A stretch of 63,817 nt of DNA, the filler included, from Octopus bimaculoides (lineage: Eukaryota), in assembly GCF_001194135.2 (NCBI RefSeq). It is 7 parts of 7 records of this genome, joined end to end, with 100 filler letters (N's around TTAATTAATTAA, not from the genome) between each part and the next. Parts side by side here need not be neighbours in the genome. Positions count along the whole stretch, not along the records: positions 55,391 to 60,919 come from NC_069005.1; 6 more parts are not named here. One strand, written 5' to 3'. This document shows positions 54,892 to 62,083 of the stretch, one piece after another; position 1 is the first letter of the stretch, and the number at the start of each line of letters is the position of its first letter. A program made the translations under genes and the position numbers. Under the pieces are notes generated by a model, which did no database searches, had not been told where the DNA came from, and was given only the letters and a program-made list of their open reading frames with translations.

Positions 54892-55590
54892 TTATAACAG
54901 GGTCCCCATATCCTGTAGATAGGTGTCAGTGGCAGGATGTCAGGGAAAACTAAACAGAAAGTTATGCGCAGAAATGAACGGGCTTAAATGTAGCCGGATT
55001 ATTTGGTAAGACATGAGTATGGCGACTGAAAGATCACCCAAAAAATAAAAACCAATGAGAAGAAAATAAAAAGGAAATGGTTTAAAGAATATGCTGAAAG
55101 TGCAGAGATATAATGTCGCCATTCTTGAAGGAAAGCTTTGAAATGCCGGAAGAATATGGCACCAATGTGGAAAATTGGAGCCCAATATTTGTCGTAAGTA
55201 TTTTCGCAGTCGTGGCCCTTGCGGCCTTGTGACCCATGTGGTCCTGTGGCCCTTGCGGATTTCGTAGGCAGAAGTCGAAAGAAACTAGCCNNNNNNNNNN
55301 NNNNNNNNNNNNNNNNNNNNNNNNNNNNNNNNNNTTAATTAATTAANNNNNNNNNNNNNNNNNNNNNNNNNNNNNNNNNNNNNNNNNNNNTATATAATTA
55401 ATCAAAGGACATACTAAGTATATTATTAATTCTGTTATTATCATTTTTTTAAATAGTCATTCCGGATGATAACAATTAATATCTGAGCAAATTAATTTTC
55501 GAGAATTATATTTTTTCTCGCGAATTGTTTGCCCCTGTATAGAATATATATATACGTACACACACAAAATATGTGTCTATAAATATAAAA

Positions 55591-56360
55591 TATGTGAAAG
55601 ACTTGGGGATCAGTATGTGCAATGACGCATCATTTCATATGCACATTAGCAAGATGGCAGCAAAGTGCAGACAACTGGCAGAATGGGTACTGAGGTCCTT
55701 CAAGACAAGAGACCAAGAAACTACGTTGACCTTGTGGAGAACCTTTGTCCTCAGCCGCCTGGACTACTGCTCCCAGTTATGGTCACCACATAGTGCCAAA
55801 CTAACGCCACCACACTAAAAAGATTGAAACAGTGCAGCGGATGAGCTACAAAGATAGGCTGAGAAAGCTATGACTTTACTCCCTGGAGCGAAGGCGTGAG
55901 AGATATGCAATAATATACACATGGAAATTCTAGAATGGCTAGTGCCTAACTTTGGCATTGAGTGTTATACAAATGCCAGAACTGGCCGCCATTGAATTGT
56001 ACCAAAGGTACCATCCACTCCTAAATTCTGGACCAGGTACTGCAATAGTCTAGGGTTCAAAGGCCTACAGCTCTTCAATGCCCTGCCATAAAAATTAAGA
56101 AATTTGCGTAAGATGAAAGTAGATGTCTTCAAAAAGAAACTAGACATCCCCCTCTTCACAATACCGGATAAACCAACAGCCCGACATCAGGTAGAGACGA
56201 GGGCAGCGGAATCGAATTCCCTTATACACCAAATGTACCAACAGTTGGGACAAAGGCACATACAAGAGTGGTGATGTGAAACACCCAGACTGAGGAAGTT
56301 AGGAAGACCATGGTAGTGCTCCAGCATGACCACGGCTGCATGGCTGAAACGAGTAAAACA
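55591..56360 (+). mobile_element. CR1-clade LINE, 5'-truncated: ORF2 C-terminus plus 3' UTR
   Basis: VKDLGISM..HISK..VLRSFKTRD..LSRLDYCSQLWSP; IETVQR; SYKDRLRKL*LYSLERRRERY; QLFNALP; FKKKLD; PDKP..RAAESNSL. ORF stop at 56272-56274, tail to about 56358. Confidence 0.92.
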
Positions 56361-56789
56361 CTANNNNNNNNNNNNNNNNNNNNNNNNNNNNNNNNNNNNN
56401 NNNNNNNNNNNNNNNNNNNNNNNNNNNNNNNNNNNNNNNNNNNNNNNNNNNNNNNNNNNNNNNNNNNNNNNNNNNNNNNNNNNNNNNNNNNNNNNNNNNN
56501 NNNNNNNNNNNNNNNNNNNNNNNNNNNNNNNNNNNNNNNNNNNNNNNNNNNNNNNNNNNNNNNNNNNNNNNNNNNNNNNNNNNNNNNNNNNNNNNNNNNN
56601 NNNNNNNNNNNNNNNNNNNNNNNNNNNNNNNNNNNNNNNNNNNNNNNNNNNNNNNNNNNNNNNNNNNNNNNNNNNNNNNNNNNNNNNNNNNNNNNNNNNN
56701 NNNNNNNNNNNNNNNNNNNNNNNNNNNNNNNNNNNNNNNNNNNNNNNNNNNNNNNNNNNNNNNNNNNNNNNNNNNNNNNNNNNNNNCAC

Positions 56790-57045
56790 ATTAAAAGATC
56801 CTTCGCAAGCCATAAACTCATAAGAGCTGGTTTTCTGGATTGTGTGGCGTATATATTCCTCTTCCGGACAGGACACCAGTCCGTTACCGAGTTATTCATT
56901 ATTGTCAGGTGAATGGACTGGAGCAATGTCAAATGAAATAATGTTCTGCTCAAGAACATAAAGCAACGCATCACCCGGTCCAGGTATCGAAACCACAATC
57001 TCACCACCATGAATGCAACACCTTAACCACCAAGGCATGCGCTTC

Positions 57046-57046
<1 letters not shown>
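56790..57046 (-). mobile_element. SINE family C, full length
   Basis: Reverse complement: gcgcatgccttggtggttaagg...ggtttcgatacctggaccggg...ttgctccagtccattcacctg...gacggactgg-like V segment and tail. Confidence 0.85.
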
Positions 57047-57091
<45 letters not shown>

Positions 57092-58329
57092 ATGTGTAAC
57101 ACACAAAGAAGAATGGAGAATTATGCATTTTTAACTCGTTATTTATAATTTATAACTTGCTTACGTACGTTTCAGTAAGCAAGTGTTATGTAATATAATG
57201 ATGCGTTAATTCTGCATAGTAATCGATCCATATTTAATCGACTATGGTATTATATAGATCTAGAGAATCGACACAAGCACATCCTTCTCAGAGCTTCTAC
57301 ACTGCAAAGAATATAGGACAGAGAATCGTCAGGATACAGTAGTAAACTACCTATTGTTGTTCCGAGCCAGCAATGGGTAAGGTCACGTGTTCGTCTTGGA
57401 TTTTAACATCCCTATTACTTTGCGCGCGCGCGCGCGTATGTATGTATGTATGTATGCATGTTATTGTTCAGTTTTATTTCAAGATTTCTTGCTAATAGAG
57501 AAAGAGCCGGTTTCTAACCTAGAGTTATTGGAATTTCAACATTAGCAACAGGGTATGTATGTATGTATGTATGTATGTATGTGTGTGTATGTGCAGATTT
57601 GTATTATGCATGTATTCTTATGTCTATAGTTGCATATCTAGACATGCTCAAAGTTATTTGAATGATAAACGTCTGGAAAGTTTTACAGATTTTTATAGTT
57701 CCAGTGATGGATTGGATCTGTAGTCTTCGAATTCGCTTTCTCCTTTCTGGTTTTCAGAAGCCTAATTTCTCAAGGTATGTATATATGTATGCATGTACGT
57801 ATTTCCTTTTTTTATTTTTACACCCGTAAGCTGAACAACTACCCTCAATATCCACTAAATAATCATACTTTTTCACATTTCTTTCGCTAAAAACATGGCT
57901 GATTACCTCCTTCGAAATCCCGAAAAACATCGTGGCCATTGATCCTGCCGTTTGACCGTGAAGAGGGTACAGACAGGCAGACAGACGGGCATAATGTCCA
58001 TTATAGTAAGATGGTCTTTGTTGACGTATCTTATGACGGTATTTTTGGCAGATATTTTTGACCTCGCTCTGTCTCTCTTCCNNNNNNNNNNNNNNNNNNN
58101 NNNNNNNNNNNNNNNNNNNNNNNNNNNNNNNNNNNNNNNNNNNNNNNNNNNNNNNNNNNNNNNNNNNNNNNNNNNNNNNNNNNNNNNNNNNNNNNNNNNN
58201 NNNNNNNNNNNNNNNNNNNNNNNNNNNNNNNNNNNNNNNNNNNNNNNNNNNNNNNNNNNNNNNNNNNNNNNNNNNNNNNNNNNNNNNNNNNNNNNNNNNN
58301 NTATATATATATATATTTATATATACGTA

Positions 58330-58520
58330 ATGTGGTTTGGCTACGTCTGCAGGATGAGCACCAGAAGACTATCACACCAACGTTTGTGGCGGCAGCGACG
58401 CACGCAAGACAGCTGCTCAATTCGGAGAGAGAGTGGTGTCCACCAGTTCGACAAAGGAATCTTGTCCATGTGTTTGCAGTTGCTGAAAATTTTGGATCTG
58501 GAATTAAGTAGTATGGTAGA
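58330..58520 (+). mobile_element. RTE LINE ORF2 C-terminal fragment
   Basis: MWFGYVCRMSTRRLSHQRLW (LRWFGHV.RM..RL type) and ...LKILDLEL. Confidence 0.65.
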
Positions 58521-60140
58521 ATTCTTGAATCTAAAAAGAGAATGTGCGATCTTTCAGTTACGCATAACTTGCATCTCTTTGATCAATTTACATACTAGAA
58601 TTCGAAAATGCACACGCTCAAAAGGGCTACAGACTGTCATAATAAACCTTAAAGTGTATGGGACTAGCATTGCTGCTCAAAAACATTGGAATCATTATAT
58701 GTTGTACATTCTGTGGCATCCTTTTATCACAAGAAATGTGTTTAGTTCATCGAAATTTGGTTATATCATATTCTCAGTTTTAACAAAACAATTGTGTACT
58801 AATACTAATGTCATCTTTACGTAATAATTCAATCTATGAATGATAATTTTTATAAATTTACAAGTAATCAACCAAAAATAATCTAGTAATAATTTGTTTA
58901 ATTCGCATAATATGTGTGTCATAATGCGAATTGTCTTTGCTTATAATTATTTCGGTTTCATACTTCCATTGTTTCGTACTTCATGATAAATCAAGTTTTT
59001 CTTTTATCATTGTAATTTGCATGCAGTGTGAAATATGTTTTTTTATATACTTTGGTACGAAAAGTATTATAATGAATTTACTTATTCGAAGTTAAAGATC
59101 ATATTTTGTACATTTTCAAAATTTTATATTAAGAACTCGGTTTAATAATTTTCGTGACATCGTAATTCACACAAAAGTCTCTTTTCGTTTTAAGATGCCA
59201 CAGAATGTACAACATATAGTGATTCCAATATTTTTGAGCAACAACGCCAGTCCCATACATTTTAAGGTTTATTATGACAGTGTGTAACCCCTTTGAGCGT
59301 GTGCATTTTTCAATTCTAGTTTCGTACTTTTTAAAGGCAACGCTTGTAATATTTTATATATGTACCGTGTTTCTCCTAATGGTGTGGCAACCTCTAATAA
59401 AGTGACACCCGAACGTCGACCAATTGAAATAGTGTGACTGTCACAATATTAAAAGAATGTATGATAAAATCGATAATAATTGTCGTATTTGTTTATTATT
59501 ATACGGAGAGATAAAATGGTTAGAAGAATCTGGTCGTGTGACATGACTTTCCAATATTATAACAAAAATTACCATAGAAGCTGCAAACCCGACCCACAAC
59601 CTCCCAAAAGTGAAAAAACGGCAGTCATTCATCACTGAGATAATTCACTTCAATGGCGGGACCAGATTCATATTATCCTAATAAATTCAGAAATGCGCTT
59701 AAGCTATTGAAATAAAGCGCTACACAGAGATAAAGAGTTATATCTCACCACTTCTGTCACATTTCCCGTCTGACCGTCATGCAAATCATTCTTCAAATAA
59801 TGCTTGTTGCTTTATATCGGCCATAACAAATTAATTTAATTTCAATTCAATTTAATTCAATTTTTCCAAAAACAACAGGTAGTTGCTAAGCAGCTTGGAT
59901 GGGAAAGCTATATACTGCTTACAAAGAGTTTTCGTCAACTGGCGTAATGTAACAGATATGTACTATATACTCAGTTTGCTTTCCAACTAAAATTCTGGCT
60001 AAACTGCAACTGTGTTGAGACTGCCTATCGAAGGCGGCTAGAAGTGGTTTCTCTTTGAGCGGGTAGATATAGATTAAAATAAAGATAAAAATGATATATA
60101 GATTGAAATAAAAATAAAAACGCAAAAGCTTTTTCATTTT

Positions 60141-60141
60141 A

Positions 60142-60204
<63 letters not shown>

Positions 60205-60217
60205 GATCTATCTATCG

Positions 60218-60261
<44 letters not shown>
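60141..60261. repeat. (CTAT)n microsatellite
   Basis: Directly visible. Confidence 0.95.
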
Positions 60262-60263
<2 letters not shown>

Positions 60264-60800
60264 GTATGTATGTATGTGTACTTGTTTCTTTGTTTCTGTC
60301 TTCATACGCATGCGTATAGCTACGTGTGCGCACGTATATGCACCTCAGTTGCTCGTATGTGAAGTTATGTCTGCCTTAAGTGAACTTTCTTTATTCCTTC
60401 CTTCCTTCTTTCCTTTCTTTTATTTCCCGTCTCTTGTCTTTTCTATTTTCATTCTCGCTGTGTCATGTTCATAGAGTCATTTTTATGTTATTGTTGTTCT
60501 TGCTACAGTCGTCGTTGCTGCGTCTTTTACCTTTATTTCGTGACTGTTCTTTCAACAAAGGAATTCCCACACTTTTCCTCTGATTCTATTTATTTCTGTT
60601 TCACACCAGGTCCACTCCCAAGAACAGCTCAGTGTGTTTTTGCTGTTGTTGTTGCCGCTACTGCTACTACTGCTGCTACTGTTGCTCTTACTGGTGCTGC
60701 TGACACTGGGGATGGTGATTGATGACACAATCTACAACAGAAGGCAATCTGAAGTATGCAGGACATAAAACATTCCTCACACTGCCCCCTCCAACAAATG

Positions 60801-60919
60801 ACGATGACAACAACGACGACGACCACCGCGACGACCACAACCACAACCACGACCACGACCACAACCACCACGACTACCACGACGACGACGACGACCACTA
60901 CGACGACCACGACCACCAC
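60801..60919. repeat. Degenerate (ACG/ACC/ACA)n trinucleotide repeat
   Basis: Directly visible; runs into a join. Confidence 0.9.
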
Positions 60920-62029: not shown

Positions 62030-62083
62030 TTCACTCTTTACTTGTTTCAGTCATTTGACTGTGGCCATGCTGGAGCACTGCCG
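62030..62083 (-). mobile_element. SINE family A tail (rest lost at join)
   Basis: ctctttacttgtttcagtcatttgactgtggccatgctggagcactgcc. Confidence 0.85.

What the first reader, a model, noticed from the sequence alone, without database searches (positions are those of the whole stretch)
56275..56360. CR1 LINE 3' UTR ends in the SINE-A tail, with a stem-loop kept by a compensatory change: a candidate SINE/LINE partnership
Seen: about 40 nt after the CR1 ORF2 stop, 56312-56357 (GGTAGTGCTCCAGCATGACCACGGCTGCATGGCTGAAACGAGTAAA) aligns without gaps to the SINE-A tail (reverse complement of about 62037-62082: GGCAGTGCTCCAGCATGGCCACAGTCAAATGACTGAAACAAGTAAA) at 37/46. Six of the nine differences fall in one 14-nt hairpin, yet pairing survives. 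The SINE has CAGTC-AAAT-GACTG; the LINE has CGGCT-GCAT-GGCTG, with a T-A to C-G double change and two G-U wobbles. Established: stringent LINEs mobilise SINEs sharing their 3' stem-loop (eel UnaL2/UnaSINE1; turtle CR1/SINE tail sharing). Inference: this CR1 lineage drove the most abundant SINE here, and the hairpin is the RT recognition signal.
Basis: partly seen in the sequence, partly recalled or inferred. Interest (0 to 1): 0.75.

Follow-up and report, generated by a model that had tools for sequence, protein, structure and literature searches.

The report
Native CR1-like LINE tail shared with SINE
The short sequence after this dead LINE's reading frame is that LINE lineage's own 3' end (two small RNA hairpins, then 8-base repeats), and a SINE carrying the same end is an ordinary case of a SINE borrowing its LINE's tail.

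Summary
56312-56357 matches the quoted SINE-A tail at 37/46. The SINE-A copy lies outside my piece, so I could not check it.

Five other LINE copies from unrelated public assemblies (57-75% protein identity) carry the same tail just after the same ORF2 end. The tail therefore belongs to the LINE and is not a SINE that landed there.

The tail holds two adjacent hairpins, not one:
conserved as a structure only, with a loop of 3-8 nt.
- **After the hairpins**: AAAC and octamer repeats, the CR1 hallmark.

None of the nine LINE/SINE differences breaks a pair. With only seven sequences the statistics are weak (about 1-10% by simulation).

The window copy is dead, and its tail is the least SINE-like of the six (79.5% against 84-87%). 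The real driver is probably a sister subfamily.

SINE/CR1 tail sharing with compensatory stem changes is already published for molluscs. I rate this a new member of a known kind, of modest interest.

The parts
55590..56274 (+). 5'-truncated, decayed C-terminal part of a CR1-like LINE ORF2, with stop TGA at 56272-56274. At least 5 in-frame stops, at least 2 frameshifts, and a 23-nt deletion relative to L003.
   Evidence: Three-frame translation. The stitched translation finds 370 homologues; the longer ones carry Pfam RVT_1 upstream of the matched region. The closest are P0003 at 75%, and P0002 and P0001 at 58% and 57% identity.
56275..56311 (+). Variable 3' UTR spacer between the stop codon and the tail module.
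   Evidence: The spacer is 37 nt here, 46 nt in L003, 27 nt in L001 and 1 nt in L002. In L020 it is 1-2 nt. It aligns only between the closest copies.
56312..56331 (+). Hairpin 1: GGU-a-GUGC[UCCA]GCAU-g-ACC, 7 bp with a 1x1 internal loop. The core GTGC.CCAGCATG is invariant except for the first loop base. The pair 56314/56329 covaries across copies.
   Evidence: RNAalifold consensus and single-sequence folds. Pair counts are U-A x3, C-G x3, U·G x1.
56333..56346 (+). The LINE consensus stem is CAGCC/GGCUG. Here two transitions give G·U and U·G wobbles.
   Evidence: The loop is 3-8 nt and not conserved among copies. The SINE-A quote has CAGUC[AAAU]GACUG, a C-G to U-A compensated pair.
56347..56363 (+). 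Single-stranded AAAC, then GAG, then the start of the terminal A-rich octamer repeat (TAAAACAC TA...), cut by the assembly gap that begins at 56364.
   Evidence: Complete relatives end GAAAC + about 3 nt + (TAAAAGAA)2 in L002, L004 and L020, or (TTAAAACA)2 in L001.

Best explanation
56312-56363 is the native 3'-terminal module of a CR1-like (stringent-type) LINE lineage. It consists of two adjacent stem-loops, a short AAAC linker, and octamer tandem repeats at the very end.

By analogy with tested LINEs, the ORF2 protein of an active master copy binds this structured tail on its own RNA. Reverse transcription then starts in the terminal repeats at a nicked target. This step is inferred, not shown.

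The window copy is a dead, 5'-truncated product of that process. The SINE most likely picked up the tail from a member of this lineage by template switching.

Which subfamily served the SINE is open, and it was probably not the subfamily of the window copy. The nearly invariant hairpin 1 is the likelier sequence-specific determinant. Hairpin 2 is kept as a shape only.
For: Shown:
- Six independent LINE copies carry the same module 1-46 nt after homologous ORF2 ends (spacer measured in five of them). They are the window, L001-L004 and L020, with 65-81% nucleotide identity over the last ~420 coding nt.
- The module is better conserved than the coding sequence (77-92%). The adjacent spacer varies in length and sequence.
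- The consensus fold has two hairpins and 12 pairs. 97.6% of cells are paired, against 22-47% when the partners are slid. Two pairs have compensatory changes, and the covariation score is reached by 8 of 500 shuffles.
- Intact-looking copies and the SINE-A quote fold well beyond shuffles (z -3.0 to -3.5).
- All nine window-versus-SINE-A differences preserve pairing or lie in loops or single strand.
- Octamer repeats end the element in four relatives.
- Relatives carry RVT_1.

From the literature:
- Stringent LINE ORF2 proteins bind their own 3' stem-loop, recognising the stem in general and the loop specifically (PMC4176376).
- CR1 3' UTRs have a conserved hairpin plus an octamer microsatellite (PMC4316615).
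- Mollusc SINEs share CR1 tails, with stem-loops and compensatory changes (PMC4824008; PMC4758252).
- Typical SINE/LINE tail homology in bivalves spans 35-61 bp at 72-95% identity (PMC11481361). Here it is 46 nt at 80-87%.
Against: - I could not see that copy, its pol III head or its 3' end.
- Only seven sequences were compared, and probably only about two independent compensatory events are involved. The shuffle control is not a probability.
- Keeping all 12 pairs after 9 random substitutions has a chance of about 1% under unbiased substitution, rising to 8-10% at the observed transition bias.
- The window copy alone folds no better than shuffles (z -0.49), and L004 does not adopt the fold at all.
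- No binding or mobilisation data exist for this lineage.
- The clade assignment (CR1 rather than a neighbouring clade) is by architecture only.
- The source organism is unknown.
Confidence: 0.7

Rival explanations
1. A truncated SINE-A copy happened to insert just behind the ORF2 stop of this one LINE copy. The LINE family itself has no such tail.
For: CR1-type copies and SINEs are both abundant, and nested insertions are common. A SINE of another kind lies only about 420 nt away across the gap.
Against: Five other copies, from different assemblies and diverged by 19-35% in coding sequence, carry the tail at the same position. The tail has diverged along with them. In L002 and L020 the tail starts 1-2 nt after the stop codon.
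Confidence: 0.02
2. The sequence the reader called the 'SINE-A tail' is not the tail of a SINE. It is a severely 5'-truncated 3' end of a sister CR1 subfamily lying next to unrelated sequence, so there is no partnership to explain.
For: CR1 copies are typically very short 3' fragments (PMC4316615). I could not see any SINE body attached to the quoted tail. The quoted tail sits within the range of divergence seen among the LINE tails themselves (80-87% against 77-92%).
Against: The CAGTC/GACTG stem and AAAT loop are found in none of the six LINE copies, which fits a separate lineage.
Confidence: 0.12
3. The conserved tail serves the LINE's own RNA (3'-end formation, stability or translation) rather than recognition by the reverse transcriptase. 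The SINE similarity is a by-product of template switching, with no role in mobilisation.
For: No functional data exist for this lineage. Conservation and covariation show only that a structure is under constraint, not what for.
Against: In every tested stringent LINE the 3' stem-loop is the ORF2 binding site and is required for retrotransposition (PMC4176376). A SINE that reached high copy number must be recognised by some reverse transcriptase, and this tail is the only LINE-derived part known.
Confidence: 0.08

Closest known systems
Bivalve CR1-14_CGi / CR1-1_CGi with BivaV-SINE2, BivaCORE-SINE1 and Vhc_1 SINEs (PMC4824008; PMC4758252), and the later bivalve survey of CR1, CR1-Zenon, L2 and Nimb partners (PMC11481361)
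   Same: An invertebrate CR1-type LINE and tRNA-derived SINEs share a 3' tail of some tens of nucleotides. Predicted conserved stem-loops and compensatory changes between SINE and LINE were used there to infer partnership. Homology length and identity fall in the same range.
   Different: I could not compare the tail sequences, because those are in figures only. The source organism here is unknown. The SINE body was not seen. The two-hairpin layout with a nearly invariant first hairpin is described from six LINE copies rather than from a curated consensus.
Eel UnaL2/UnaSINE1 and zebrafish ZfL2-1/ZfL2-2 (L2 clade; Kajikawa and Okada 2002 from my own knowledge; Hayashi et al. 2014, PMC4176376)
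   Same: This is the stringent-type logic: a 3' stem-loop followed by short terminal repeats, the SINE carrying the LINE's tail, the stem recognised as a shape and the loop as a sequence.
   Different: Those cases are experimentally proven and belong to the L2 clade, with a single stem-loop. Here there are two hairpins, a different sequence, and no experiment.
Amniote CR1 3' UTR (hairpin plus octamer microsatellite; PMC4316615 citing Suh et al. 2011) and the tortoise CR1 / Pol III SINE tail sharing (Ohshima et al. 1996, from my own knowledge)
   Same: The architecture matches: hairpin(s), then 8-nt tandem repeats at the terminus, no poly(A), and severe 5' truncation of copies.
   Different: The sequences are unrelated, and the octamer here is A-rich (TAAAAGAA or TTAAAACA). 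Clade membership was not tested by phylogeny.

Membership tests
SINE/LINE pair sharing a 3' tail (stringent-type partnership) | The tail is a family-level feature of the LINE, found at the same place in independent copies. | tested here: met
   Six copies carry it 1-46 nt after homologous ORF2 stops, spacer measured in five.
SINE/LINE pair sharing a 3' tail (stringent-type partnership) | A bona fide SINE (pol III head, short, non-coding, many copies) carries the homologous tail at its 3' end. | not testable with these tools
   The SINE-A copy lies outside the piece and only 46 quoted letters are available. Searches for SINE copies found nothing usable.
SINE/LINE pair sharing a 3' tail (stringent-type partnership) | Tail homology lies in the usual range (35-61 bp at 72-95% identity in bivalves, PMC11481361). 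| tested here: met
   46 nt at 37/46 to the window copy. Over the 39-nt core, identity is 79.5-86.8% to the five LINE tails compared; L020 was not included.
SINE/LINE pair sharing a 3' tail (stringent-type partnership) | A conserved stem-loop in the tail, supported by compensatory changes. | tested here: met
   Two hairpins, 97.6% of cells paired, two pairs with changes on both sides. Power is low: seven sequences, and P of about 0.01-0.1 for the pairwise case.
SINE/LINE pair sharing a 3' tail (stringent-type partnership) | LINE and SINE share the same terminal tandem repeat. | tested here: inconclusive
   The window copy is cut by the gap after TAAAACAC TA, and the SINE quote stops at GTAAA. 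Both are compatible with the AGTAAAAGAA... seen in L020.
SINE/LINE pair sharing a 3' tail (stringent-type partnership) | Mobilisation in trans, or at least overlapping periods of activity. | not testable with these tools
   This needs the whole genome or a cell assay.
CR1-clade LINE | An ORF2 with a reverse transcriptase followed by the conserved C-terminal region. | tested here: met
   The window holds only the C-terminal region. Homologues aligned over 93-95% of it carry RVT_1 upstream.
CR1-clade LINE | A 3' UTR hairpin followed by an octamer microsatellite, with no poly(A) tail. | tested here: met
   (TAAAAGAA)2 in L002, L004 and L020; (TTAAAACA)2 in L001. In the window copy the end is hidden by the gap. 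L003 has a decayed repeat running into an A-run.
CR1-clade LINE | Phylogenetic placement of the RT inside CR1 rather than L2, Rex1, Jockey or CR1-Zenon. | not tested
   No reference set of LINE clades was on hand, and the database homologues are unnamed. The LYSLERRRERY-type motif resembles chicken CR1 from memory only.
CR1-clade LINE | An apurinic-type endonuclease domain at the N-terminus of ORF2. | not tested
   The window copy and the short contigs lack the 5' part.

The most novel reading that the evidence does not exclude
The two-hairpin module, with its nearly invariant GUGC-nCCA-GCAU hairpin, could be the recognition signal of the CR1 lineage that drove a very large lineage-specific SINE expansion in the source genome.

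If the source is an octopus-like cephalopod (a guess from the sequence context), this would matter more. SINEs make up roughly a tenth of those genomes, and the papers I could read name no LINE partner for them. Naming the partner would make the cause of that expansion testable.
Probability: 0.2. Interest if true: 0.5.

Novelty: new member of a known kind. Interest (0 to 1): 0.27.

Why it matters
Knowing which LINE tail a SINE carries tells which reverse transcriptase copied it. That in turn explains when and why the SINE multiplied.

This work defines a LINE tail module from six copies: two hairpins plus octamer repeats. It also shows which part is invariant, which gives a concrete target for binding and mobilisation tests and a search pattern for annotating the genome.

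The principle is textbook and is already documented for CR1-type LINEs in molluscs. The gain is local annotation, not a new mechanism.

Tried and rejected
1. JGI metagenome scan for GGTGCWCCAGCATGRCCNCRGYY: 12 hits, all GC-rich bacterial chance matches with no hairpin or GAAAC after them.
2. Protein search with the spurious 48-aa ORF of the neighbouring SINE, hoping to fetch SINE copies and their tails: no candidate.
3. Exact look-up of the window's 81-aa LINE ORF, hoping for a contig that bridges the assembly gap: not on record.
4. Scans of prokaryotic genomes and viral contigs with a tail-plus-hairpin pattern: 0 hits each.
5. Full-text search for the tail letters: one irrelevant alphavirus paper. 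A search for the accession numbers of the related contigs, to learn the organism: nothing, and one of my terms was too loose.
6. Covariance model of the tail, run with filters off over the window and 11 of the fetched loci: only the six training LINE copies matched. There is no further copy in the piece.
7. More distant CR1-like relatives (L017, L018, L019, L021, L022) have different tails, though they also end in short tandem repeats. In L023 the contig ends about 70 nt after the stop with no sign of the tail. The module is therefore lineage-specific, not a general CR1 motif.
8. Local alignment of the neighbouring SINE against the LINE: no meaningful similarity.
9. Rfam and ARAGORN on the piece: only low-complexity miRNA false positives and no tRNA.
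10. I considered reading the window copy's two G·U wobbles as selected and rejected it. The copy is dead, and transitions in stems often give wobbles by chance.

Full report
**What is in the piece**

The usable sequence is three blocks: 55391-56363, 56787-58081 and 58302-60919, separated by runs of N.

From about 55590 to 56274 the + strand carries the decayed C-terminal part of a LINE ORF2. The reading frame is broken by several stops, at least two frameshifts and a 23-nt deletion relative to the nearest relative. It ends ...VETRAAESNSLIHQMYQQLGQRHIQEW, followed by TGA at 56272-56274.

A stitched translation finds 370 homologues. The longer ones carry the Pfam reverse-transcriptase domain RVT_1 just upstream of the matched region. 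This is therefore the end of a non-LTR retrotransposon ORF2.

The 3' UTR runs for 89 nt and is then cut by an assembly gap at 56364. The true end of this copy is not visible.

**Checking the observation**

They match the quoted SINE-A string at 37/46 without gaps, and six of the nine differences fall in 56334-56343. A 22-mer of the tail with up to three mismatches occurs once in the window and in none of 100 shuffles.

The SINE-A copy itself lies beyond my window, so the SINE side cannot be verified. A local alignment and a covariance-model search found no second tail copy in the piece.

**Is the tail the LINE's own?**

Five further LINE copies carry the tail:

| Copy | Source | Protein identity to the window |
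|---|---|---|
| L003 | ENA metagenome assembly | 75% |
| L001 | ENA metagenome assembly | 58% |
| L002 | ENA metagenome assembly | 57% |
| L004 | Logan assembly of a sequencing run | 54% |
| L020 | NCBI assembly GCA_024449705.1 | 62% |

All end ORF2 with the same ...RAA..SNSL.HQ... motif. In the four where I measured it, GG(Y)nGTGC(n)CCAGCATG(R)CC(n)CAGCC-loop-GGCTGAAA(C/T) follows 1 to 46 nt after the stop.

Over the last ~420 coding nucleotides these copies are 65-81% identical. Over the 39-nt tail core they are 77-92% identical. The spacer between the stop and the tail varies in length and aligns only between the closest copies.

The tail is thus a conserved, native part of this LINE lineage. 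The idea that a truncated SINE landed behind one ORF2 is rejected.

More distant CR1-like families have different tails, although they also end in short tandem repeats. One of them (L022) ends ...RAAESNSLIHQ... So the RAAESNSL motif is much wider than the tail-bearing lineage.

**Anatomy of the tail**

The consensus fold and the single-sequence folds agree on two adjacent hairpins.

- **Hairpin 1 (window 56312-56331)** is GG(Y)-n-GUGC[nCCA]GCAU-g-(R)CC, with seven pairs and a 1x1 internal loop. Its core is invariant in all seven sequences apart from the first loop base.
The LINE consensus is CAGCC-loop-GGCUG, with a loop of 3 to 8 nt and no conserved loop letters.
- **After the hairpins** come AAAC, about three bases, and octamer repeats: (TAAAAGAA)2 in L002, L004 and L020, and (TTAAAACA)2 in L001. 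In L020 the element visibly ends after the repeats and passes into unrelated flank. The window shows GAG TAAAACAC TA and then the gap.

**Covariation**

On the seven-sequence alignment 97.6% of pair cells form standard pairs. When the partners are slid the figure is 22-47%.

Two pairs show changes on both sides:
- In hairpin 1, U-A in the window, L003 and L004; C-G in L002, L020 and SINE-A; and the U·G intermediate in L001.
- In hairpin 2, C-G in all six LINE copies against U-A in SINE-A.

All nine window-versus-SINE-A differences are now accounted for: two compensated pairs (four bases), two wobble-to-Watson-Crick changes, two loop bases, and one base in the single-stranded 3' part. None breaks a pair.

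This evidence is real but thin. It reflects perhaps two independent compensatory events in seven sequences. The covariation score is reached by 8 of 500 shuffles, and that control is not a probability. A simulation of nine random substitutions keeps all 12 pairs in about 1% of trials without transition bias, and in 8-10% at the observed bias of 8 transitions in 9.

The window copy alone folds no better than shuffles (z -0.49), and L004 has lost the fold. L003, L001 and the SINE-A quote fold at z -3.0 to -3.5.

Right:
- The tail is shared.
- The hairpin is real.
- The T-A/C-G double change holds against all six LINE copies.

To correct:
- The two G·U wobbles of the window copy are weak evidence. 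The copy is dead, so its private changes were never tested by retrotransposition. One wobble (U·G next to the loop) is shared with L004 and may belong to a subfamily; the other is private.
- The window copy's tail is the least like SINE-A (79.5%). The other LINE tails compared score 84-87%, with L002 at 86.8%. The subfamily that served the SINE is probably a sister of this one.
- If one hairpin carries sequence-specific recognition, the invariant hairpin 1 is the better candidate.

**Mechanism (inferred)**

In tested stringent LINEs, a region of the ORF2 protein between the endonuclease and RT domains binds the 3' stem-loop of its own RNA. The stem is recognised in general and the loop specifically, and this step is required for retrotransposition (PMC4176376). 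From my own knowledge of UnaL2, the terminal repeats serve initiation.

I infer the same here. ORF2 protein of an active master binds the two-hairpin module, starts in the octamer repeats, and often stops early, leaving 5'-truncated copies like this one. A pol III transcript ending in the same module would be copied in trans.

Shown: conservation, structure and position of the module in the LINE lineage. Inferred: binding, initiation, and any mobilisation of SINE-A.

**Comparison with what is known**

- The architecture, hairpin plus octamer microsatellite, is the one described for amniote CR1 3' UTRs (PMC4316615).
- SINEs sharing CR1 tails, with predicted stem-loops and compensatory changes, are published for bivalves (PMC4824008; PMC4758252).
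- A later survey found SINE/LINE tail homologies of 35-61 bp at 72-95% identity, with CR1, CR1-Zenon, L2 and Nimb as partners (PMC11481361).
- The present case falls inside that range and that logic.

I could not place the RT in a clade tree, so 'CR1' stands on architecture and on a remembered motif resemblance.

The source organism is unknown to me. The papers I read on octopus repeats describe abundant tRNA-Core and tRNA-Deu SINEs and recently active CR1 families, and name no partner LINE. That link is only a possibility.

**Verdict**

The feature is a native two-hairpin tail of a CR1-like LINE lineage. Its homology to a SINE tail is the ordinary signature of a SINE/LINE partnership. I rate it a new member of a known kind, of modest interest.

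Noticed in passing
window 56787-57045, minus strand: A tRNA-derived SINE with its head at about 57045 and a B-box-like GGTTTCGATACC at about 56994-56983. More than 250 nt of it are visible before the assembly gap cuts its 3' end. Its 3' end and the LINE's 3' end point at each other across the gap 56364-56786. If it carried the same tail, the resulting inverted repeat could explain why the assembly broke there. ARAGORN and Rfam do not call it, and it has no similarity to the LINE.
   Followed up: partly
window 58594-58720 and 59194-59320: An inverted repeat with 127-nt arms, 91% complementary, 473 nt apart. It looks like a MITE or a small DNA-transposon remnant.
   Followed up: no
window 57052-57095, 57554-57590, 60140-60260, 60786-60919: Dense microsatellites: (TA)n(TG)n, (TATG)n, (TATC)n and an ACC/ACG triplet array running to the piece's edge. 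The Rfam mir-297 and mir-3149 hits sit on these and are far below the gathering scores, so they are false positives.
   Followed up: yes
proteins P0123-P0139 and P0174; loci L021, L022, L023: The ORF2 C-terminal motif (G)RAAE(S/T)NSL(L/I)HQ is shared by many CR1-like LINE families in marine metagenome contigs. Where the 3' end is readable (L021, L022), the tail differs from the one here and ends in its own short tandem repeats; the L023 contig ends about 70 nt past the stop. A very conserved protein end sits next to fast-changing RNA tails.
   Followed up: partly
L002 735-737 and L020 531-536: In these two LINE copies the tail module starts 1-2 nt after the ORF2 stop codon. In the window, L001 and L003 it starts 27-46 nt after it. 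The 3' UTR spacer is therefore dispensable.
   Followed up: yes
window 55800-55815: The window LINE copy has a 23-nt deletion relative to L003 in the ...LEAVQRHYTK... region, in addition to its stops and frameshifts.
   Followed up: yes
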